IMG/VR virus record: IMGVR_UViG_3300017917_001996
Coordinates: 186,290-250,289 of that record
Reading direction: 5' to 3' (one strand)
Length of the DNA stretch: 64,000 nucleotides
Shown here piece after piece: positions 5,270-58,819 of the stretch. How positions within the stretch are numbered: position 1 is the stretch's first letter; the number at the start of each line of letters is the position of its first letter. The notes under the pieces were generated by a model, which was given only the letters and a program-made list of their open reading frames with translations, was not told where the DNA came from and ran no database searches. Made by a program: the position numbers and the translations under genes.

Positions 5270-5298
5270 TTGACAAAACTAAAACTAGGCTATATAAT
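5270..5298 (+). promoter_or_regulatory. Sigma70-type promoter, leaderless to ATG 5304
   Basis: TTGACA-17 nt-TATAAT, ATG 5 nt downstream, no SD. Confidence 0.8.
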
Positions 5299-5303
5299 AG
5301 CGT

Positions 5304-8300
5304 ATGAAAATTGCTATTATAGATATAATTGGGCTTCCGTATGATGGTACAACGGTACACAATCAAGGACTAGGCGGAAGTGAAAGCGCAGTAACATTCA
5401 TGGCCGAGCAGCTGGCTCGGTTGAATTTTGATGTAACTGTTTTTAATAACTGCAACATTGATCACGCCCGTCCTGGGGTATATTCGGGTGTACTGTATAG
5501 ACCACTTGAAGATCTAACTCAAGATCACGAGTTTGATATTGTTATTAGCAGCCGAACTATAATTCCATTTGTTGACCCACACAGGTATCACGAACTTAAC
5601 GACAATCGTGCATTTGCACTGCAACACTATAATCTCTATGACCGTGTAGTCTCCCGAGCACAAATGAGAATTCTTTGGATGCATGACACCTTTTGTCTAG
5701 GTGATAACATGATCGAAGAGTTGGCTGTCAGCAATCGGATTACCGATATCTTTACACTAAGTGACTTTCATCTAACCTATGTGGCTAACTGCCATCACGG
5801 ACGCCGCAGAAATTTTGAAGTACTTAAACCAAAGTTGTTTATTACTAGAAACGGTGCTAACTGTTATCACAAAGAAATCGATCTAAAGAAAAAAGACCCA
5901 AATCTCTTTGTCTATAATGCCAGTGTGACCAAAGGAATGATACCCTTGGTTAATGAAGTTTGGCCAAGATTAAAAGCACAAATACCCGAAGCTCGGTTAA
6001 AGGTAATCGGTGGTTATTACAGATTTAGCGAAAGCTCGGGACCCGATCAGCAAGAACAAGATTGGCGACGAATGGTTGCTGATTCAAGGTATGCTGAGTT
6101 GGATATTGAGTTCACCGGAGTTATTCCACAAAAAGCAATCGGTGACATCTTAGCAGAATCTAATTTTATGATATACCCAACGGCGTTTCCTGAAACGTTT
6201 GGAATATCAACATTAGAATCATTACTTTACAATACTCCAGCAATTACTTGTAGATTCGGTGCTCTTGAAGAAATTGCAGTCGAAGGTGCTTGTTACCTAA
6301 TAGACTATGCCGTTGAACCTAACAGTTTATTTCCTGATATCAATCGAGTTGAGCAAGTACAAAAATTTGTAGACCTGGCTGTACGTGCTTATCGTGATCC
6401 ATATCTACATCAACAAAAACAACAATACTGTAACGTGGTCAAAGACATCGCTGGTTGGGATAGTGTAGCTCTACAGTGGAAGCAGCATTTCTATAAGAAA
6501 GCTGGAGAGTATTTGTCGCGAGACGAATATCGTGCTGTGAGCAAAATCAATCACAAAGTGCACAAAATTTGGAATCGTCGATACACTAACCCTATAGAGT
6601 TTGAACACTACAAGCCGGGTAATGAACAACCCATTGTGGTTGTGAGTACATTCTATAACTGTGCCAACTACATTGCACGTTGCATCAAAAGTGTAGCCTC
6701 TCAAGATTACGATAATTACAGTGTCTACCTGGTTAATGATGCCAGCACAGACAACACGCTAGAAGTAATCAACCAAACATTATCCACATTGCCTGTGGAT
6801 ATTAGATCAAAGTTTAAAACAATCAATCGTGATACAAATGTTGGTGCAGTAAAAAATCAAGTTGAAGTATTTAGAAGTATTCGAGATCCTGAATCAATTG
6901 TTATGATTCTAGATGGCGACGACAGTTTAATAAACAACAATTCCATTTTTAGCTACTACAATTCTATCTATGATGGAACAACAGAGTTTACCTATGGTAG
7001 CTGTTGGAGTATGGTTGACCGCATACCTTTGATCAGCCAACCTTATCCAGAACACATCAAACAGTCTCGAGCATATAGAGAGCATAGGTTTAATTGGAAT
7101 ATGCCTTACACGCATCTTCGCACATTTAAACAATATTTGATTAACAATATTAACAATTCGGTATTCAAGGATCAAGATGGTAATTGGTTCCGTGCTGGCG
7201 GCGATGGTGCTACTTTTTATAACTTAATTGAAGCAGCTGATCCAGATAAGGTTAAATGCTTACAGGAAGTTGTCTATAACTACAACGACACTAATCCACT
7301 GAATGATTACAAGATAAATGGTCACGAACAAAATAAAACTGCCGATGCTATTCTAAATCAAAAGAAAACAGAAAGCAAATTGTATTCGGTGATTGTTCCT
7401 ACAATGTGGAAGACTGCTAAAACATTTGCAGGCTTTGCCAAATCTTTGTGTGCACACCCGTTAGTGGGCGAATTAATCATTATTAATAATCAAAGTGAGT
7501 TGACCCCTGAAGGACTCAACAATCCTAAAATTAGAATGATCGATCCGGGCAGAAATATCTATGTTAATCCTGCCTGGAACCTAGGAGTAAAAACAAGCAG
7601 ATACGATCGTTTGTGTATTGTCAATGACGATGTTATATTTGATCTGACTGTACTAGAACGATTAAAAGATAGGCTAACACCCGAATCAGGAGTATTTGGA
7701 CTTTGTCCTGGTGTAGCCGATTTTAACCAACCTCCGGTTATTAACGGTAATATCGATATTATTCCATGGTCTGGCCAACACACCTACGGCTTTGGTTGCT
7801 TGATGTTTATACACAAAAAGTCTTGGCGAGAGATTCCTGCAGGATTAGAAATTTACTATGGCGACAACTTTATCTTTGACTTGCAGCTACATGAAAAGAA
7901 AACTAACTATCTAATAACCAACATGTTGTTCAAGTCCCAGTTTGCAGCCACGACATCAGACAAATCTATTACTGCTGGATTCTTAGAAAAAGAAACACCG
8001 ATTTACGAACAAATAAAAAGCCAAGGATTTACAACTAAAAAACAAGAGATAGCACCTGCTATAAACAAAACCGCAATGCCTAAAAAAAGAATTTTAATTG
8101 CTATCCCTACTGCACGTAACATAGAAGCAGAAACATTTAAAAGCATATATGATTTAGAAATACCCGAAGGGTATACTGCCACGTTCCAATACTTCTATGG
8201 TTACAACGTTGATCAAGTTAGAAATCTGATTGCTGATTGGGTAGTTAGAGGATTTGATTATTTGTTTAGTGTAGACAGTGATATTGCATTTCCGCCAGAC

Positions 8301-10367: not shown

Positions 10368-10769
10368 ATGAAAAAAGTGTTTGTTAACGGCTCCTTTGAT
10401 TTATTACATCCTGGGCACATTAAGTTATTAAATACTGCTCGTAGTCTAGGTGACTATCTAATGGTAGCCATAGACTCTGATCGACGAATAGCCGAAAAGA
10501 AAGGTCCAGACCGTCCTGTTAACAATCAATTTACTAGATACGTTTTGATGAGCAACATCAAAGCAGTTGATCAAGTTGTTGTTTTTGACAGCGACAGTGA
10601 ATTAGAAGATATTATTAAAAATTTTCAACCAGACATTATGATGGTAGGCAGCGACTGGCGAGGACGTACAGTAATTGGATCGCAGTATGCAGGCCATTTA
10701 GAGTTTTTCGAAAGACAAGATGATTATTCAACTACCAGTATACTCCAAAATTATATTAATCGGAGATAA
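10368..10769 (+). CDS. rfaE2: Heptose-1-phosphate nucleotidyltransferase (HldE/RfaE domain II-like)
   Basis: NGSFDLLHPGH HIGH motif, KKGPDRP, YSTT; start moved to MKKVFVNG. Confidence 0.85.
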   Translation: MKKVFVNGSFDLLHPGHIKLLNTARSLGDYLMVAIDSDRRIAEKKGPDRPVNNQFTRYVLMSNIKAVDQVVVFDSDSELEDIIKNFQPDIMMVGSDWRGRTVIGSQYAGHLEFFERQDDYSTTSILQNYINRR

Positions 10770-15075: not shown

Positions 15076-15104
15076 TTGACAGGCTAACCGTTTTAGTGTA
15101 TAAT
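15076..15104 (+). promoter_or_regulatory. Sigma70-type promoter, leaderless to ATG 15112
   Basis: TTGACA-17-TATAAT, ATG 7 nt downstream. Confidence 0.8.
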
Positions 15105-15111
15105 TACAGTT

Positions 15112-15378
15112 ATGGACGACTTAGAAGCTGCAAAACAACGTTATGAAGCAATTTTGCCTGCGGCTACTGCAATTCGCAGTTCCAACGTCTGGATTGACTT
15201 ACGTAGGATGACTCGAAATTGTGTCAAAATCTTGGATGAAATCAGCAAAGAAAGTGTTGTTTGTAGACAACGGCATACGGTCACTGCAAAATATAATACT
15301 TTAGTTAAAGATTATGTAGAAGCTGTAGATGTACTAGAAAAGTACGTAATGCTGGCACACCTATCTGGAGCCAGTTGA
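15112..15378 (+). CDS. Hypothetical protein
   Basis: 88-aa ORF directly after a consensus promoter. Confidence 0.75.
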   Translation: MDDLEAAKQRYEAILPAATAIRSSNVWIDLRRMTRNCVKILDEISKESVVCRQRHTVTAKYNTLVKDYVEAVDVLEKYVMLAHLSGAS

Positions 15379-15403
15379 CACCCTGTCCAAAAGGCTATAT
15401 AAT
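15375..15403 (+). promoter_or_regulatory. Sigma70-type early promoter
   Basis: TTGACA-17-TATAAT, then CAGGAG SD and ATG 15428. Confidence 0.85.
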
Positions 15404-15427: not shown

Positions 15428-16585
15428 ATGGCTACAGTTGCCGGCGTTAAAATTAAGACCAAAGTGCCCAAGGCACGCAACCCGATCTTCTTTGACGAAA
15501 AGTACACTGGTGGTGAGCCCACATGGCCTGCTGAAGCCAAAGACTGGCCCGAAGATAAATTTGATAGCCGACTTCGAAAGAGTTTTTATTACTACAATTA
15601 TTACTACAGTCAGAAAGACTGCAAGAAGTATGTTGTAGAATGGATGAAGTCTACTACAGAGTTTGACCGTGACGAAGTTCGTGCTTTTGAGCGAGCTAAC
15701 GACAAATGGTTACCTATGACAGCCTGTAGCCTAATTATGGCACATCGCCAAGGTATGCCTTTGCGTCCACGCCACATCGAGTTTTTGGACAAGTGTATTC
15801 TGGAAGTCATTGAGCGTAGCAAGGGCGAACCACAGGAAGAAGATGCAGTAGCAACACCTGCCCAGGTTGCAGCCAAACCTACTATCCAAGATCGTCTTAA
15901 TGAAAAAACCAGTGAGCTAATTGGTGAGCTTGAAGGCAAATACGACGAGCTCGAAGGCACAAAATTCTATGATTGGTTTGTAGCCAATAACGTTGTGCAA
16001 AGCCAACTTGGCAAGTATGAAGCGGTCTACACCAAGCGTAAAGCTGAACTCGAAGAAGCACAAAGCAAAAAGGATGCACAGCTCAAAGAAGCCTATGCAC
16101 ATTACAAAGCCTCAGACTTTAAAAAGCACATTTCCTGGATCGATGATCTGCTAACTGCTATCGAGCAATACCGCGGTGTCAAGAAAGCGGCCAAGAAGGC
16201 ACGAGTTAAAAAGGCACCTAGCAAAGAGAAAATGGTTGCCAAGCTCAAGTACGCCAAAGAGAACAAAACTCTTAAGGTTGTTAGCATTAATCCCGCTGAT
16301 ATTGTTGGCAGTGGCGAACTTTGGGTGTATAACCTTAAAACACGCAAGTTGGGCAAGTATGTAGCCGCAAGCTACCAGACTCTGGGCATTAAAGGTACAA
16401 GTATCACAGGGTACGATGTAGATAAGAGTGTGGCCAAGACCCTACGCAAGCCCGAGGAACAGCTCAAAGAGTTTGCCAAAGCGGGTAAAGTAGCTCTTCG
16501 TACATATCTAAAAGATATTAAGGCTGTTGAAGTTAAGCTAAACGGACGTATCAGCGAAGATGTTCTACTGCTAAAAGTGGCCTAA
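15428..16585 (+). CDS. Conserved basic phage hypothetical protein
   Basis: 385-aa ORF with good SD; C-terminal LWVYNLKTRKL...KTLRKPEE domain recalled from T4-like phages. Confidence 0.75.
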   Translation: MATVAGVKIKTKVPKARNPIFFDEKYTGGEPTWPAEAKDWPEDKFDSRLRKSFYYYNYYYSQKDCKKYVVEWMKSTTEFDRDEVRAFERANDKWLPMTACSLIMAHRQGMPLRPRHIEFLDKCILEVIERSKGEPQEEDAVATPAQVAAKPTIQDRLNEKTSELIGELEGKYDELEGTKFYDWFVANNVVQSQLGKYEAVYTKRKAELEEAQSKKDAQLKEAYAHYKASDFKKHISWIDDLLTAIEQYRGVKKAAKKARVKKAPSKEKMVAKLKYAKENKTLKVVSINPADIVGSGELWVYNLKTRKLGKYVAASYQTLGIKGTSITGYDVDKSVAKTLRKPEEQLKEFAKAGKVALRTYLKDIKAVEVKLNGRISEDVLLLKVA

Positions 16586-16595
16586 GAGTACCCTG

Positions 16596-16648
16596 TACAG
16601 TCCTGTTACAAGTATAAGTTTTTGACTAAATACTTGAACAGGATTGTA
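16596..16648 (+). promoter_or_regulatory. SD-sequestering hairpin with internal late promoter (TAAATA 16627-16632)
   Basis: TACAGTCCTGTTACAAGTAT pairs with ATACTTGAACAGGATTGTA (one G-U, one bulge). Confidence 0.75.
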
Positions 16649-16653
16649 TTTTT

Positions 16654-17787
16654 ATGGCTACAATTAAACCCGGTTTAGACCCAATCACCAAAACACTTAC
16701 AGCAGACAGCCTTGGTGGCCCAGGGCCTATTGCCTTTGACGAAACCACAGTTACTGCACTTGACACTAAGCGTAACGAAATAATTGATTACATCAGGTTG
16801 CGTCTCGGCGACGGAATGGTCGATGTTGAATTAGATTCCGATCATTACTATTTGGCAATTAAAAATGCCTTGATTAAGTATCGTCAAAAAGCGCAAAATG
16901 CATACGAAGAAAGCTATGCATTTTTAAACTTGTTGCCCGAAACACAAGAATACATTCTACCACAAGAAATAATTACAGTCAGACAAGTATTTCGTAGAGG
17001 CATTGGTAGTATCACTGGTACCACTGCAAGTCAGTTTGAACCTTTTGCATCGGGTTACTTGAACACTTACATGTTGGTAGCAGGCCGCGTCGGTGGCTTG
17101 TTAAACTATGATCTGTTTGTGCAGTATCAAGAGCAAGCTATGAAGATGTTTGGTGGTTTTATGAATTTCCAATGGAATTCAGTTAGCAAGAAATTAACCT
17201 TGGTACGTAAGATTCCAGACACTGGGCACACTTACGTAAGATTAAACTCTTTGACTGCTAGCGGAACAGCAGCCGGTAGCACAATAACTATCGTTACTGA
17301 AGATGTTTGGAATGTTAGTGTAGGCAATAGTCTAGTAATCACCAATTGCCGAGTCAAAGGTTACAATGGTACCTATCAAATACAAACAGTCGATCTAGTT
17401 AATAAGACTGTCACTATTACTGCTAACGGCGAATTACAGGATACTTCGGTAGTTACATTTGATCTAAGAAGCACACAAGTTTGGAGCCCGACCACCGACG
17501 TTCCAACTGAAACAGTTCTATTGCATACCTACAATTACAAACCTGATGTAATGTTGCTTAACGATCATTTAGTTTATCCTTGGTTACAGGAATATGCCTA
17601 TAGCTTTGCTAAAATGATGCTAGGCGAAGCACGTAGCAAGTTTGCACAAATTGCTGGCCCACAGGGTGGCACCACACTTAATGGTGATGCATTAAAAACT
17701 GAAGCACTAACTGAAATGCAAAAGCTCGAAGAAGAATTAAAGAACTATTCCGACGGTTCTATGCCACTAACTTGGGTAATTGGATAA
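16654..17787 (+). CDS. Neck protein (T4 gp13-like)
   Basis: DYIRLRLGDGMVDVEL; WLQEYA...GEARSKF...GPQGGTTLNG. Confidence 0.8.
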   Translation: MATIKPGLDPITKTLTADSLGGPGPIAFDETTVTALDTKRNEIIDYIRLRLGDGMVDVELDSDHYYLAIKNALIKYRQKAQNAYEESYAFLNLLPETQEYILPQEIITVRQVFRRGIGSITGTTASQFEPFASGYLNTYMLVAGRVGGLLNYDLFVQYQEQAMKMFGGFMNFQWNSVSKKLTLVRKIPDTGHTYVRLNSLTASGTAAGSTITIVTEDVWNVSVGNSLVITNCRVKGYNGTYQIQTVDLVNKTVTITANGELQDTSVVTFDLRSTQVWSPTTDVPTETVLLHTYNYKPDVMLLNDHLVYPWLQEYAYSFAKMMLGEARSKFAQIAGPQGGTTLNGDALKTEALTEMQKLEEELKNYSDGSMPLTWVIG

Positions 17788-18152: not shown

Positions 18153-18211
18153 CTTGACACTGCTCTTTATGTAAATGTTTAGTATCTTATCCACTTCGTA
18201 TAAATAATTAT

Positions 18212-18644
18212 ATGAGTGAAGAGATTTTTATTAAAATCTACTAGAAATAAAATGTCAAAATCTCAACTCAAACGTTTTCAAAAAAATAACGGAACTTTCC
18301 TCGGAAGGGCACACAGCGTTGAGACGCGAGCAAAAATGTCACAGAAAGCATCACGACCTAAATCAGACAAATGGAGAGAGAGTGCATCTAAGAATAGAAA
18401 AGGTAGACAGGCACATAATAAAGGTATTTTACATTCAGAAGAAACTAAGCAAAAAATAAGAGAATCAGTTAAAGGTGAAAAAAACGGATTTTATGGTAAA
18501 CACCATTCCGCTGAACAACGTGAAAAAAAACGACAGGAAAAACTTACATCTCCTAGACATACTTGTCCTCATTGTAGTAAAATAGTTGATGCAATGAATT
18601 ATGCTAGATGGCACGGCAATAATTGTAAAAAGAGGATTATATGA
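18212..18644 (+). pseudogene. NUMOD3/Zn-finger homing-endonuclease remnant without nuclease domain; apparent frameshift near the start
   Basis: HSVETRAKMS, HSEETKQKI, NGFYGKHHS, CPHC..NYARWHG..CK; ATG 18212 after TATAAATA is out of frame with the main ORF. Confidence 0.55.
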
Positions 18645-19249
18645 TATTAGGCTTAGTGGGTTTCATTGGTTCTGGCAAAGATACAGCAGCAGATTATCTA
18701 GTTAACTTTCACGAGTTCCAGCGTGAAAGTTTTGCCTCTACACTTAAAGATGCAGTGTCTAATGTGTTCGGTTGGAACAGAGAATTACTCGAAGGGCGCA
18801 CAAAGCATAGTCGAGAATGGCGTGAACAGCCCGATGAATGGTGGAGCAATCGACTAAACATGCATATTACTCCACGTTGGATATTGCAAAACTGGGGTAC
18901 TAATGTACTGCGACAGCATTTCCATGATGATATCTGGATTGCCAGCTTAGAAAACAAACTGCGCCAAAGTAAAAACAATGTGGTAATTAGCGATTGTAGA
19001 TTCCCTAACGAAATTACAGCACTACGACGCCAGGGTGGGCGTGTAATTTGGATCAAGCGTGGACACCTTCCTGTATGGTACGAGAATGCAGTATTAGCTA
19101 ACCAAGGCGATATCTATGCTATTGAGTATCTTGAAGAAAACAATATACATCCTAGCGAAACGTCGTGGGCAGGAACTAACTTTGATCAGGTAATTGACAA
19201 TAATGGGTCCATTGAAGACCTATATAGCCAACTTAAAAATCTGGTATAA
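18641..19249 (+). CDS. Deoxynucleoside monophosphate kinase (T4 gp1-like)
   Basis: GFIGSGKDT, SFASTLKD, TPRWILQNWGT, SDCRFPNE, HPSE. Confidence 0.9.
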   Translation: MILGLVGFIGSGKDTAADYLVNFHEFQRESFASTLKDAVSNVFGWNRELLEGRTKHSREWREQPDEWWSNRLNMHITPRWILQNWGTNVLRQHFHDDIWIASLENKLRQSKNNVVISDCRFPNEITALRRQGGRVIWIKRGHLPVWYENAVLANQGDIYAIEYLEENNIHPSETSWAGTNFDQVIDNNGSIEDLYSQLKNLV

Positions 19250-23779: not shown

Positions 23780-23795
23780 TATATTCGCTTACTCT

Positions 23796-23822
23796 AAAAG
23801 GGCCCTAGTTGGCCCTTTTTTT
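23796..23822 (+). terminator. Rho-independent terminator
   Basis: AAAAGGGCC-CTAGTT-GGCCCTTTTTTT. Confidence 0.85.
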
Positions 23823-23852
23823 ATGGCATAAATATTTGTACTAAGGATTATT

Positions 23853-25463
23853 ATGGCCGATATTTTTTCTGATTTAGCTAACTTTGCTGGAGACACTCTA
23901 AGGCAGGTGATTACTCCTGACAATGTCAGGGATTATACTCATGCCAGTAAGTTGTTTGTTGGCGACCAGTATAGACTAGTTCCAAAGAACGGCTTTCTGT
24001 TTCACGTATTCATTGATATTAATAATCCCTACCTAGACTTTCAAAATCCAAACTCACTAAGTGAAGTAGGTCTTATGGTTAAGAGTGCGGATCTACCGAG
24101 ATTTACCGTTGAAACAAAAACACTCAATGCCTATAACAGACCAAACATTGTACAAAATAAAATTCGTTACGATCCTATAACAATTGCATTCCATGACGAC
24201 AGTAATAACCTAATTCGTAATTTTTGGTCATCGTACATGAAGTATTACTACAGAGATAGTGATTACGCAGAGAATTCTTATGCTATCCCACACAAGTATT
24301 CACCACAACAACTTAGTGGCTTTGGTTATTCGCCGCAACAGACTGCGCCTTATTTAAAGTGTATTCGTTTATATAGTTTGCATCAAAAGAGATTCAGTGA
24401 ATACATTCTTATTAATCCTATAATTAAGTCGATGAGACATGGTTCACATGCCCAGGATAAAATGGAAACTATGCAACATGAGATGACCATCGAATACGAA
24501 GCAGTTTTGTACAACAGTGGTCGTACTTCTTTGGGTAACCCTAAAGGATTTGCTTTGTTACACTATGACACAATGCCAAGTCCAATTACCGGAGCAGGTG
24601 GTGGAGCAAGATCGATATTTGGCCCAGGCGGTCTAATAGACACTGGCAAAGATGTTTTAGATGATATAAGTAATGGTAACTTTGGATCTGCGATATTCAA
24701 GGCAGCACGTGGTATTAACAATGCACGTGGTATGAATCTAAAAACCACTGCTATTACAGAGATAACAGATGCATTTAACCGCAGTATCAGGGAAAGTGTG
24801 ACTTCTCAAAGAATTATGGTACCCAATATGACAGGGACATCTGGTATTGTTAATTCACCTTACAGTGGAATTGGAGTTAGCAATGCTGTGGCTGCTCTCG
24901 CTGGTGTTGTTGCTATCAGAGAAACAAGAGTTCCGGAACCGTTGAACAATCAACGCATCAATGACATACGACAGTCTACAGCCAGTGAGTATTCGTCGCA
25001 ACTTACAAATTATAAAAAAACCTTTCCTCCTAATCCTGGTATAGTTGCCAGTGCAAGTAATACAGGATCGTTGACGTTGCTCAATGACCAAAATACAATA
25101 AGACCGATTGGAGTTCAAGGTACAATTAACGAGACTACTCGAAAACAACAATTAGATAATAATATTAAATCAGCATCGGATGCAGTTACCAACGCCACTG
25201 TAGAATTAGCCAGAGCTAAGAATCAAGAAGCTAATGCCACTGCTGCTATAAGCATGTTAAACATAAAATTAAATGCAGCTCGTGCATTACCTTTATACAA
25301 TCCTAGTAGAGAAGGCCTAATTCAACAATTAACACAAAGCATCGAACAGCAACAAAAAATTAAAGAAGATGCTGCTGCATTGGTTGCTACACTGACTGCC
25401 AAGCTGGCATTGCTAACACAAAAATTACAGGCTTTGAAATCTGAAAAGGATGCAATAAGATAA
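23853..25463 (+). CDS. Tube-fold baseplate/tail-tube initiator-like protein with C-terminal coiled coil
   Basis: VKSADLP...YDPITIAFHDD...MTIEYE; ATAAATA upstream. Confidence 0.55.
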   Translation: MADIFSDLANFAGDTLRQVITPDNVRDYTHASKLFVGDQYRLVPKNGFLFHVFIDINNPYLDFQNPNSLSEVGLMVKSADLPRFTVETKTLNAYNRPNIVQNKIRYDPITIAFHDDSNNLIRNFWSSYMKYYYRDSDYAENSYAIPHKYSPQQLSGFGYSPQQTAPYLKCIRLYSLHQKRFSEYILINPIIKSMRHGSHAQDKMETMQHEMTIEYEAVLYNSGRTSLGNPKGFALLHYDTMPSPITGAGGGARSIFGPGGLIDTGKDVLDDISNGNFGSAIFKAARGINNARGMNLKTTAITEITDAFNRSIRESVTSQRIMVPNMTGTSGIVNSPYSGIGVSNAVAALAGVVAIRETRVPEPLNNQRINDIRQSTASEYSSQLTNYKKTFPPNPGIVASASNTGSLTLLNDQNTIRPIGVQGTINETTRKQQLDNNIKSASDAVTNATVELARAKNQEANATAAISMLNIKLNAARALPLYNPSREGLIQQLTQSIEQQQKIKEDAAALVATLTAKLALLTQKLQALKSEKDAIR

Positions 25464-44837: not shown

Positions 44838-44893
44838 TACTTTTTGTGTACTAAAACCCTGTTCTTGACAGGGTTTTATTTTGGCAGTATAAT
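44833..44893 (+). promoter_or_regulatory. Early promoter element copy 1 (inverted repeat across -35)
   Basis: TTGACA-17-TATAAT; AAAACCCTGT/ACAGGGTTTT. Confidence 0.8.
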
Positions 44894-44899
44894 TAGGGC

Positions 44900-45247
44900 A
44901 TGTCCAACAAGGAGATGCTGATGCAAACTACATACCTCGACACTAAAGAAGCACCTAACAAGTGGTTTGCTCTGCAAGATCGTCGTATGCGTAATCACGC
45001 AAATCGTACACTGTACACCGATGCCCAACAAGTTCGCCTTGAGCGCATTCGCCTTGCCCTGGAGATGGTTGTGCGCGGTACTGTTTACGAAGTTGCATAC
45101 GGCCGTCGTAGCGCATCTGTAAAAGTACAAAACGGTGCAATCATTGCAGATCGTAAAATGTTGGCCTTGCTCGAATCAGACTGGAGTAAGGAAGGTATCA
45201 CCAAGAAAGAAACACCGCAAGGTTTTCAATATCACATGCCTCTTTGA
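44900..45247 (+). CDS. Hypothetical early protein
   Basis: After promoter; alternative start 44921 with AAGGAG SD. Confidence 0.75.
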   Translation: MSNKEMLMQTTYLDTKEAPNKWFALQDRRMRNHANRTLYTDAQQVRLERIRLALEMVVRGTVYEVAYGRRSASVKVQNGAIIADRKMLALLESDWSKEGITKKETPQGFQYHMPL

Positions 45248-57370: not shown

Positions 57371-57963
57371 AATTCACCAGTGACGTTGATATAGACTTTG
57401 CAGATAGACAAAAAGTCTTAAGTTTAATCCGGCATGTGCCTGCGACTATAGCTGAAGGTACAGATCGTACAGCACACAATACTGGAATTTACGTTACTGA
57501 CATTCCTGTAGACCCATTTACAGGGCGTAGTGCAATAGATTATCGAGAAGCTGAACGTCGTGGTTATATTAAGCTAGACTTTCTTAATGTTGGGTTATAT
57601 AACCAAGTTAAAGACGAATCGCATTTGCTAGAACTTATGCACCGCGAGCCACCTTGGCACAGGCTCTACGAGCCGGAGTTTTGTTCACAGTTGATCCACG
57701 TGAACAATCATTATGATACACTGATTAAAATGCCCGAGGCTGTTAACAGTATTCCTAGGCTAGCTATGTTCTTGGCTATCATCCGCCCTTCTAAGCGACA
57801 TCTAATAGGTAAGACTTGGGCAGAAGTTGCTCGGACTATATGGGACAAGCCCACGGATAACAGCTACTACTTTAAAAAGAGCCATAGCGTAGGCTACAGT
57901 CATCTAGTAGTAGTTAATATGAATTTGTTGGATCTAAACGGTCTTACGAATCAAGGTAATTGA
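57367..57963 (+). CDS. Miniature DNA polymerase III alpha (DnaE)-like catalytic fragment
   Basis: DVDIDF, HNTG, KLDFL, LAIIRP, YFKKSHSVGY. Confidence 0.8.
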   Translation: MKFTSDVDIDFADRQKVLSLIRHVPATIAEGTDRTAHNTGIYVTDIPVDPFTGRSAIDYREAERRGYIKLDFLNVGLYNQVKDESHLLELMHREPPWHRLYEPEFCSQLIHVNNHYDTLIKMPEAVNSIPRLAMFLAIIRPSKRHLIGKTWAEVARTIWDKPTDNSYYFKKSHSVGYSHLVVVNMNLLDLNGLTNQGN

Positions 57964-58305
57964 CCGACGCTTACTGCGTTTTGATGCTATCTCTTTGAGA
58001 TTAATCTGAGGTCCCATGCGGATCTCAACGTCTTTGCTGTTCATAGTTTTAACGCAAAACTTGAATTCAGCCCATTCTTTCTTTAGGAAAACGTTAATAG
58101 GAATTATCCTATTGCTTTCCCACCACCATTGCTCTCCTAATTCTAGGAAACGCTTCTTCTGTTCAGGGAACTTTATACTACCAAAGTCGTAAATGGTAGT
58201 GATTTGCTCATCGGAATTTTGTATGATTCCGATGTATTCGTTGCCCCCGTAAACCAAATAGGTTATAAAAGGGTACCGTGCGAGTAAGGGTTCGATTTCT
58301 TCCAC
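57934..58305 (-). CDS. Conserved hypothetical protein
   Basis: YPFIT..EYIGIIQN..WWWESNR.IPI; minus-strand TATAAATA at 58337-58344. Confidence 0.75.
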   Translation of the reverse strand: MEEIEPLLARYPFITYLVYGGNEYIGIIQNSDEQITTIYDFGSIKFPEQKKRFLELGEQWWWESNRIIPINVFLKKEWAEFKFCVKTMNSKDVEIRMGPQINLKEIASKRSKRRSITLIRKTV

Positions 58306-58324
58306 TGGGCTAAATATAAAAATA

Positions 58325-58819
58325 ATGATAACAATCTATTTATATCCAAATATAATTGACGTTCAATTTTGGGACGTAACTCTTTTCAGTGCAAGGAACC
58401 AATATATGTATGCTAAACCTGTAGTCGTGTACCAAGGAATTGACAATCCTCTGCAGGTTCGCGTCAAGAACCAGGAGCAAACTCCGGTGAACATGACACC
58501 GTATTTACTGCAGGCCGAAATACAAGACCCTGATAGTTTCCTAACAGTAGAATCCTTTGGTATTCAATTTCAAAATGTTACCAAGGGTATAGGAACATTT
58601 GTAATCCCAAAAGATTTAGTAAATGGTTTAGAGCAGCGACGTTACAAGTTAACGTTTAAAGCTATAAACAAATCAAGCAACCAAGAACAGCCAGCATATA
58701 TTGACCACAATTATATGGTTCCGATGGATTTAATAGTGTTACCTGGTTATTATTCGACAATGCCTCCGGATGCCGAGGAAACCGACGACTTCTTAAAAAT
58801 TGATGGTGGAACAATATGA
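58325..58819 (+). CDS. Putative virion structural protein
   Basis: TAAATA at 58311; beta-rich; precedes fibre genes. Confidence 0.6.
   Translation: MITIYLYPNIIDVQFWDVTLFSARNQYMYAKPVVVYQGIDNPLQVRVKNQEQTPVNMTPYLLQAEIQDPDSFLTVESFGIQFQNVTKGIGTFVIPKDLVNGLEQRRYKLTFKAINKSSNQEQPAYIDHNYMVPMDLIVLPGYYSTMPPDAEETDDFLKIDGGTI

What the first reader, a model, noticed from the sequence alone, without database searches (positions are those of the whole stretch)
16596..16656. Long hairpin sequestering the neck-gene SD, released by an internal late promoter
Seen: a 19-bp stem (one G-U, one bulge) covers CAGGAT; TAAATA lies at the loop/3'-arm junction; upstream is a strong sigma70 gene with no separate terminator. 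A late transcript would lack the 5' arm. This is the clearest of three such switches and suggests systematic use for core structural genes, beyond the few T4 examples I know.
Basis: partly seen in the sequence, partly recalled or inferred. Interest (0 to 1): 0.62.

Follow-up and report, generated by a model that had tools for sequence, protein, structure and literature searches.

The report
Hairpin-masked neck gene with late promoter
A conserved RNA hairpin in front of a giant phage's neck-protein gene hides the ribosome-binding site on transcripts coming from the early gene upstream, while a late promoter inside the hairpin should give transcripts that lack the masking arm; this is the timing switch known from phage T4, here found on a structural gene and kept across dozens of related phages.

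Summary
A 20-pair helix (16595-16615 with 16630-16649, bulged A16608, two G-U) folds at -28 kcal/mol (z -5.8). It pairs the AGGA Shine-Dalgarno (16640-16643) with TCCT (16601-16604), and TAAATA (16627-16632) sits at the loop/3'-arm junction. It is the most structured of 255 gene-upstream regions in the 250-kb record.

The timing-switch reading is well supported, though only in silico:
- TAAATA is the most enriched upstream hexamer, and a gp55-like late sigma factor is encoded.
- The upstream 385-aa gene has a perfect sigma70 promoter and no terminator before the hairpin.
- Among 58 distinct relatives TAAATA is invariant, and 55 keep a helix around it with many independent compensatory changes.
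- Six cultured jumbo phages (GAP32, CBB, XaC1, Munch, Hallingskeid, EJP2) carry an analogous hairpin.

The claim of systematic use for core structural genes is not supported. The sheath gene of the same relatives keeps TAAATA but has no hairpin, and only about 4 of 37 late-promoter genes in this genome show one; one of those is an HNH endonuclease.

This is a new, deeply conserved member of the T4 e/soc/I-TevI type of switch. No transcript data exist for it. Terminator and translational-coupling roles remain possible additions.

The parts
15076..15104 (+). Perfect sigma70-type promoter (TTGACA-17-TATAAT). Its -10 box ends 7 nt before ATG 15112 of an 88-aa ORF, a leaderless-like layout.
15375..15403 (+). 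Perfect sigma70-type promoter of the upstream 385-aa gene; presumed early promoter.
   Evidence: There are 7 perfect sites in 250 kb, against roughly 0.3 expected (my estimate from base composition). A promoter-like element sits at the same position in relatives.
15428..16585 (+). Upstream gene, 385 aa, phrog_11903, function unknown; presumed early and non-structural.
   Evidence: Homologues lie in replication/early regions of phiM12 and Cr30. The PA5oct homologue carries no virion MS note, unlike its neighbours.
16595..16615 (+). 5' arm of the hairpin, including the anti-SD TCCT at 16601-16604 and bulged A16608. It lies upstream of the predicted late start, so it is present only on read-through transcripts.
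16627..16632 (+). TAAATA, core of the T4-type (gp55) late promoter, at the loop/3'-arm junction. Predicted +1 is near 16638.
   Evidence: Invariant in 58 relatives. Most enriched hexamer upstream of genes. A gp55-like sigma factor is present. The T4 TATA box spans -13 to -6 (PMC2988020).
16630..16649 (+). 3' arm of the hairpin, containing the Shine-Dalgarno AGGA at 16640-16643.
   Evidence: P(SD unpaired) is 0.00 on the long RNA and 0.47 on the RNA starting at the predicted +1.
16650..16653 (+). T run directly after the stem. It is the SD-ATG spacer and gives the element an intrinsic-terminator look in this phage.
   Evidence: Among relatives only 8 of 49 have at least 5 T in the 7 bases after the stem.
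16654..17787 (+). gp13-like neck protein / head-tail adaptor Ad2 gene, 377 aa.
   Evidence: phrog_211, E 2.8e-33; PDB neck protein gp13 9mkb, E 2.9e-5

Best explanation
The element is a temporal translational switch of the kind known for T4 genes e, soc and I-TevI.

1. Host sigma70 RNA polymerase starts early at 15375-15403 (and 15076-15104), transcribes the 385-aa gene and runs into the intergenic hairpin.
2. On these long RNAs the arm 16595-16615 pairs with 16630-16649 and buries the AGGA Shine-Dalgarno, so the neck gene is not translated. In this particular phage the T run after the stem may also stop part of the transcription.
3. Late in infection, polymerase carrying the phage's gp55-like sigma factor recognises TAAATA at the top of the hairpin and starts near 16638, downstream of the whole 5' arm.
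4. The resulting 16-nt leader cannot form the helix, the SD is free, and neck protein is made.

Shown here: the helix, selection for it, the promoter motifs, the sigma factor and the gene order. Inferred: the transcript ends and the effect on translation.
For: Structure in the window: -28.2 kcal/mol, z -5.8; the most structured of 255 upstream regions.

Selection for pairing:
- 55 of 58 distinct relatives (60-77% aa identity, many different metagenomes) have at least 8 pairs around TAAATA, and the SD core lies in the 3' arm in 48.
- Subgroup A2: 90.6% of cells paired, against about 40% when the partner is slid. 9 of 13 pairs show compensatory changes, and 0 of 500 shuffles reach the observed value.
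- The window's own subgroup A3: 82% paired against 28-45% for slid partners, with 7 compensating pairs.
- On the neck-protein tree, pair 17-36 changes state at least 8 times and stays paired in all 23 sequences.
- Cognate 5' halves fold at -19.3 kcal/mol, against -10.4 for chimeras.
- Internal G-U pairs outnumber A-C mismatches 31 to 11, which points to an RNA of the + strand.

Late promoter:
- TAAATA is invariant in all 58 and enriched 14-fold at -40 to -12 of gene starts (33 genes against 2.3 expected).
- A gp55-like sigma factor is encoded (phrog_12791, E 1.9e-56).
- The same motif was predicted as the late promoter of the neck gene in phage CBB (PMC5259590 supplement).

Early read-through: 12/12 sigma70 promoters and no + strand terminator before the hairpin; the promoter position is conserved in relatives.

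Accessibility: median P(SD unpaired) is 0.00 on long RNA and 0.48 on predicted late RNA.

Context controls:
- The sheath gene, whose upstream neighbour is divergent, keeps TAAATA but has no hairpin.
- In Atu_ph07 the upstream gene is divergent and there is no hairpin.
- In L067 an antisense HNH gene is inserted and the 5' arm is lost, while the promoter and ribosome-binding region are identical to L068.
- An HNH endonuclease gene in the same genome has the same layout, as T4 homing endonucleases do (PMC2988022).
Against: No RNA data exist. The only public runs holding this DNA are DNA libraries from a pond metagenome, so neither the late start near 16638 nor early read-through has been observed.

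The predicted late leader is very short (13-18 nt, with the SD 2-4 nt from the 5' end). The SD on the short RNA is only moderately open (median 0.48).

In the window the hairpin plus T run could terminate most early transcripts, which would make the translational block secondary.

The upstream stop codon lies close to the helix (median 4 nt, and 9 nt to the anti-SD). A terminating ribosome could therefore open the helix in many relatives.

PA5oct, 121Q and RaK2 have a co-directional upstream gene but no hairpin, so the device is not obligatory.
Confidence: 0.68

Rival explanations
1. The hairpin is mainly an intrinsic terminator that ends the early transcription unit. The late promoter is embedded in it so that late transcripts, which lack the 5' arm, escape termination. 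SD pairing would be a by-product of using the purine-rich SD as stem material.
For: In the window a 20-pair stem is followed directly by a T run. XaC1, CBB and GAP32 have 5-8 T after the stem. No other terminator separates the early gene from the neck gene. The tube gene of the same phage is insulated by an ordinary terminator followed by TAAATA.
Against: The T tail is not conserved: 8 of 49 relatives have at least 5 T in the 7 bases after the stem, and 22 of 49 have 2 or fewer. What is conserved is inclusion of the SD in the 3' arm (48 of 58). The CBB authors' terminator list has no entry for this site.
Confidence: 0.12
2. The hairpin couples neck-gene translation to translation of the upstream ORF on long transcripts. 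A ribosome terminating a few bases before the helix melts the anti-SD and frees the SD.
For: The gap from the stop codon to the helix has a median of 4 nt, and to the anti-SD a median of 9 nt, within reach of a terminating ribosome in about half of the relatives. GAP32 is similar.
Against: In the window itself the anti-SD is 15 nt past the stop and the helix has 20 pairs. The gap ranges from 5 to 17 nt, and up to 30, so it is not tightly constrained. The upstream gene differs between clades (phrog_11903 here, small unrelated ORFs in GAP32/CBB) while the hairpin stays with the neck gene. Coupling does not explain why the late promoter is always placed so as to drop the 5' arm.
Confidence: 0.08
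3. The inverted repeat acts at the DNA level, as a protein operator over the late promoter, a cruciform, or a hairpin-form promoter as in phage N4.
For: The promoter core lies on the dyad axis. I-TevI-type operators overlapping late promoters are known in T4 (PMC2988022).
Against: The arm sequences differ widely between relatives while pairing is kept. G-U exceeds A-C by 31 to 11, so the constraint is strand-specific. Other late promoters of the same genomes have no repeat. L067 keeps the promoter without the 5' arm.
Confidence: 0.04
4. The hairpin is an RNA processing or stability element, for example an RNase III site or a 3' stabiliser of the early mRNA.
For: The window's helix is about 20 bp, near the length that RNase III needs (established knowledge, not tested here).
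Against: Most relatives have stems of only 10-15 pairs. This reading gives no reason for the SD to be the conserved partner.
Confidence: 0.04

Closest known systems
T4 gene e (lysozyme) leader hairpin with late promoters (McPheeters et al. 1986, as reviewed in PMC3014915)
   Same: The late gene lies downstream of early transcription. The SD is sequestered in a helix on long transcripts. A TATAAATA-type late promoter is placed so that late RNA lacks the 5' strand. A gp55-type sigma factor is used.
   Different: The gene here is a gp13-like neck protein in a distant jumbo phage. The promoter core is the shorter TAAATA and sits at the hairpin apex. The predicted leader is only 13-18 nt. Conservation with covariation is documented across about 60 genomes. 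Nothing has been tested experimentally.
T4 I-TevI, I-TevII, I-TevIII, segB and Aeh1 mobE homing-endonuclease hairpins (PMC2988022)
   Same: The arrangement of RBS hairpin and late promoter is the same. The window's genome also has an HNH endonuclease gene with this layout (G000 57881-58615).
   Different: Those regulate selfish endonucleases embedded in early operons. This one regulates a core virion gene and is retained through deep divergence.
T4 soc, 49, 25 and 26 translational control by RNA structure (PMC2988022, PMC3014915)
   Same: These are late (partly structural) genes lying on long early or middle transcripts and controlled by structure at the ribosome-binding region.
   Different: Different genes and different geometries. 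The gene 25 structure is a conserved stem at the ribosome-binding region rather than a promoter-containing hairpin.
Intrinsic (Rho-independent) terminators
   Same: In the window the element is a stable stem followed by a T run, at the end of a transcription unit.
   Different: The T run is absent in about half of the relatives. The stem contains a promoter core and the next gene's SD.

Membership tests
T4-type late-promoter / RBS-hairpin translational switch | SD and/or start codon sequestered in a stable helix on the long (early or middle) transcript | tested here: met
   The fold is -28.2 kcal/mol. P(SD unpaired) is 0.00 on the long RNA. Covariation supports the helix. All of this is computational only.
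T4-type late-promoter / RBS-hairpin translational switch | gp55-type late promoter placed so that the late transcript lacks the 5' strand of the helix | tested here: met
   TAAATA at 16627-16632 is invariant in relatives and enriched genome-wide. By T4 geometry +1 falls near 16638, and the 5' arm ends at 16615. The start site itself has not been mapped.
T4-type late-promoter / RBS-hairpin translational switch | Phage encodes the gp55-like late sigma factor | tested here: met
   L083:1240-1830 matches phrog_12791 at E 1.9e-56 and T4 gp55 at E 1.4e-6. No convincing match to T4 gp45 was found (E 1e-3 inside a 1577-aa frame). gp33 was not sought. The record is about 71% complete.
T4-type late-promoter / RBS-hairpin translational switch | Early or middle transcription from upstream reads into the regulated gene | tested here: inconclusive
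   There are perfect sigma70 promoters and no terminator before the hairpin, but the hairpin plus T run may itself terminate. No RNA runs are available.
T4-type late-promoter / RBS-hairpin translational switch | Translation blocked on long RNA and active on late RNA | not testable with these tools
   Needs toeprinting, reporter fusions or Ribo-seq in a cultured carrier.
Intrinsic terminator | Stable stem immediately followed by a U tract, conserved among relatives | tested here: not met
   The feature is present in the window, but only 8 of 49 relatives have at least 5 T in the 7 bases after the stem and 22 of 49 have 2 or fewer.
Any Rfam family | Match to a curated covariance model | tested here: not met
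   No match at E up to 1 in 16300-16900.

The most novel reading that the evidence does not exclude
The hairpin is an ancient boundary element tied specifically to the gp13-like neck gene. It combines an anti-SD arm, a late promoter and, in some phages, a terminator in 55 nt or less. It has been kept through more than 50% protein divergence, from uncultured pond phages to phages of Cronobacter, Pectobacterium, Salmonella, Erwinia, Xanthomonas and E. coli, whatever gene lies upstream. That would mean untimely neck-protein synthesis is itself selected against, for example because it interferes with portal or packaging steps, and is not just a side effect of gene order.
Probability: 0.2. Interest if true: 0.65.

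Novelty: new member of a known kind. Interest (0 to 1): 0.5.

Why it matters
The T4 trick of timing translation by choice of promoter is usually treated as a curiosity of a few T4 genes and homing endonucleases. These results show it under strong, long-lasting selection on a core virion gene in a large and poorly studied group of jumbo phages.

The result has three practical uses:
- It gives a covariation-supported RNA element that could be added to RNA family libraries.
- It gives a rule for annotating early/late boundaries in metagenomic jumbo phages: TAAATA at the top of a hairpin that pairs the SD.
- It names six cultured phages in which the mechanism can be tested directly.

It also corrects the idea that such switches are systematic for structural genes. 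In this genome a strong switch was found only at late genes with a co-directional gene upstream, and at only about 4 of those 30.

Tried and rejected
- Covariance model R1, built from subgroup A2, did not recover even the window's own hairpin, because stem and loop lengths differ between subgroups. I used my own fold-based scans instead.
- A MAFFT alignment of all 58 leaders (A1) was not structurally consistent, so pair counts were made on two subgroups of uniform geometry (A2, A3).
- The public run search found only DNA libraries of one pond-metagenome study. Read laying was therefore not used, and no transcript evidence could be obtained.
- The PA5oct RNA-seq paper gives no gene-level timing for the homologous gene pair, and none of its supplementary files is held as text in this library.
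- The exact T4 consensus TATAAATA is not enriched in the window (3 sites against 5.6 expected). The functional core here is TAAATA.
- Rfam gave no match. The Atlas and PDB sequence searches did not identify the upstream protein.
- 'Three switches' in the window: the sites at 10429, 19641 (sheath) and 32471 fold weakly (z -2 or weaker). The sheath one is not conserved.
- A DNA-level palindrome reading was rejected because of strand-specific G-U tolerance and the sequence diversity of the arms.
- The search for homologous proteins, the large representative search, structure prediction and complex prediction were not needed.

Full report
**Where the window lies.** The window is the last 64 kb of a 250,289-base IMG/VR virus record, estimated 71% complete. 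The DNA is held by DNA libraries from a pond metagenome. The record is a T4-superfamily-like jumbo myovirus:
- a gp15-like sheath stabiliser, a 1115-aa sheath, a tube protein and a dNMP kinase surround the finding;
- the nearest named relatives of the neck protein are PA5oct, Atu_ph07, 121Q/PBECO4 and GAP32-like phages, at 31-47% identity.

**The observation.**
- The sequence 16586-16670 folds at -28.2 kcal/mol, against -12.65 +/- 2.68 for shuffles (z -5.8).
- The helix pairs 16595-16607 with 16637-16649 and 16609-16615 with 16630-16636. A16608 is bulged, and there are two G-U pairs, one of them terminal.
- AGGA (16640-16643) pairs with TCCT (16601-16604). TAAATA is at 16627-16632, the ATG at 16654, and a T run (16650-16653) follows the stem.
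- Of 255 gene-upstream regions in the record this is the most structured (z -8.1, next -5.7).

**The genes.**
- The downstream gene (16654-17787, 377 aa) matches phrog_211 head-tail adaptor Ad2 (E 2.8e-33) and solved gp13 neck proteins (9mkb, E 2.9e-5).
- The upstream gene (15428-16585, 385 aa) is phrog_11903, of unknown function.
- Homologues of the upstream gene sit among replication and early-type genes in phiM12 and Cr30. The PA5oct homologue carries no virion MS note, unlike the neck, sheath and tube proteins next to it.
- The upstream gene is preceded by a 12/12 TTGACA-17-TATAAT promoter at 15375-15403, and another perfect one lies at 15076-15104.
- The record has 7 perfect and 27 near-perfect such sites. 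I estimate about 0.3 perfect sites from base composition alone.
- No terminator-like site lies on the + strand between these promoters and the hairpin.

**Is TAAATA a late promoter?**
- It is the most enriched hexamer at -40 to -12 of predicted gene starts: 33 genes against 2.3 expected, a 14-fold enrichment. It clusters at -22 to -32 and -37 to -43, in front of the sheath, tube, neck and other virion genes.
- The record encodes a gp55-like late sigma factor (phrog_12791, E 1.9e-56; T4 gp55, E 1.4e-6) next to a gp47-like gene, as in T4.
- In T4 the 8-bp late TATA box spans -13 to -6 (PMC2988020). This puts the predicted start near 16638, inside the 3' arm and 23 nt past the end of the 5' arm.
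- An ATAAATA-type late motif and a gp55-like factor were predicted for the related phages CBB and GAP32 (PMC5259590). The CBB supplement lists this very motif as the neck-gene promoter.

**Comparative evidence.** A scan of viral contigs returned 79 loci with neck proteins 60-77% identical, from many different metagenomes; 58 have distinct leaders.
- TAAATA is invariant in all 58 and lies 24-29 nt before the ATG.
- 55 of the 58 have at least 8 pairs enclosing it, and in 48 the SD core is in the 3' arm.
- The arms differ in sequence between lineages.
- Subgroup A2 (uniform geometry, 23 sequences): a 13-pair helix has 90.6% of cells paired, against 37-42% when the partner is slid. 9 pairs show compensatory changes, and 0 of 500 shuffles reach the observed covariation.
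- The window's own subgroup A3 (17 sequences): 82% of cells are paired against 28-45% for slid partners. 7 pairs compensate, mainly the outer pairs next to the SD.
- On a neck-protein tree, pair 17-36 of A2 changes state at least 8 times and is paired in all 23 sequences.
- Swapping 5' halves between relatives raises the mean energy from -19.3 to -10.4 kcal/mol.
- Internal G-U pairs outnumber A-C mismatches 31 to 11, as expected for an RNA of the + strand rather than a symmetric DNA site.
- The partition function gives a median P(SD unpaired) of 0.00 on long leaders and 0.48 on RNAs starting at the predicted late +1. For the window the values are 0.00 and 0.47.

**Context controls.**
- The sheath gene of the same relatives (49 distinct leaders) keeps TAAATA but has no conserved structure (median z 0.03). 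Its upstream neighbour is on the other strand.
- Across the record, about 4 of 37 late-promoter genes combine z below -3 with an SD paired to bases upstream of the predicted start. All 4 have a co-directional upstream gene, and none of the 7 genes with a divergent neighbour does.
- One of those 4 is an HNH endonuclease gene (G000 57881-58615). That is exactly the class regulated this way in T4 (PMC2988022).
- In locus L067 an antisense HNH gene has been inserted between the early gene and the neck gene. The 5' arm is gone, but the promoter, SD and start are identical to those of its close relative L068. The 5' arm is therefore not part of the promoter.
- In Atu_ph07 the upstream gene is divergent and there is no hairpin.

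**Wider distribution.** Cultured jumbo phages carry an analogous hairpin before their neck genes, with TAAATA in the 5' arm or loop and the SD in the 3' arm:

| Phage | Energy (kcal/mol) | z |
|---|---|---|
| EJP2 | -21.4 | -6.4 |
| GAP32 | -19.2 | -4.2 |
| CBB | -20.2 | -5.1 |
| XaC1 | -18.3 | -5.2 |
| Munch | -25.3 | -5.5 |
| Hallingskeid | -20.9 | -5.1 |

PA5oct, 121Q and RaK2 lack the hairpin. The upstream genes of the carriers differ from the one in the window, so the element travels with the neck gene. I found no paper in the searchable library that describes this hairpin, and the CBB terminator list has no entry for it. That is no proof that it has never been noted.

**Mechanism and rivals.** The best reading is the T4-type switch: long sigma70 transcripts carry a masked SD, and gp55-type transcripts start inside the hairpin and are translatable. 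This mechanism is established for T4 e, soc, I-TevI and others (PMC3014915, PMC2988022).
- Terminator role. Two features allow an added role. The window, XaC1, CBB and GAP32 have a T run after the stem, so the element may also terminate early transcription there. But the T run is missing in about half of the relatives.
- Translational coupling. The upstream stop codon lies a median of 4 nt before the helix and 9 nt before the anti-SD. A terminating ribosome could open the helix in some relatives, though in the window the anti-SD is 15 nt away.
- DNA-level and RNase III readings fit the data poorly.
- One further consequence is my inference only and is not tested: an untranslated neck gene on early RNA would be open to Rho-dependent termination, which would shield the downstream late genes.

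**Limits.** No transcript data exist for this phage. Gene calls for the genome-wide counts come from a simple ORF heuristic of my own. The host is unknown.

**Verdict.** The switch interpretation is supported by strong comparative evidence but is not proven. The claim of systematic use is not supported. This is a new, deeply conserved member of a known kind of regulation, of moderate interest, and it can be tested directly in cultured relatives.

Noticed in passing
L100:602-652, L101:603-652, L103:621-661, L104:604-645, L105:607-652, L097:1401-1452: Six cultured jumbo phages (GAP32, CBB, XaC1, Munch, Hallingskeid, EJP2) have an analogous hairpin before their neck genes, with TAAATA in the 5' arm or loop and the SD in the 3' arm (z -4.2 to -6.4). 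PA5oct, 121Q, RaK2 and Atu_ph07 do not.
   Followed up: partly
L087:18234-19015 (G000 57834-58615): An HNH endonuclease gene (phrog_681/559) elsewhere in the same genome has the same layout: a 19-pair hairpin pairs its GGAGGA SD, with TATAAATA-like TAAATA in the loop.
   Followed up: partly
window 5270-5304, 15076-15112, 44865-44900: Perfect sigma70 consensus promoters whose -10 box ends only 5-7 nt before the ATG of an ORF (1352, 88 and 115 aa). This suggests leaderless early mRNAs.
   Followed up: no
window 18199-18644: A NUMOD3 homing-endonuclease-like ORF (142 aa) sits between the neck module and the dNMP kinase gene. One of only three exact TATAAATA sites in the window lies just upstream of it.
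   Followed up: no
L067:2194-3027 (- strand): An HNH endonuclease gene is inserted antisense between the early gene and the neck gene. It removes the 5' arm of the hairpin but leaves the promoter, SD and start unchanged relative to L068.
   Followed up: yes
L096:1416-1488 and L102:573-643: 121Q and RaK2 keep a sequence like the 5' arm of the Hallingskeid hairpin, ending in TAAATA, but lack the 3' arm and any recognisable SD before the annotated neck start.
   Followed up: no
window 23780-23853: The tube gene is insulated differently: a canonical GC-rich terminator with a T run is followed directly by TAAATA and an unpaired SD.
   Followed up: partly
window 18641-19249: A dNMP kinase gene sits between the neck and sheath genes. 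The same order is seen in PA5oct, 121Q, GAP32, CBB and XaC1, and in PA5oct the kinase carries a virion MS note.
   Followed up: no
L083:1240-2896 (G000 115407-117063): The gp55-like late sigma gene lies directly upstream of a gp47/SbcD-like gene, close to the T4 gene order. No convincing match to T4 gp45 was found in the 71%-complete record.
   Followed up: partly
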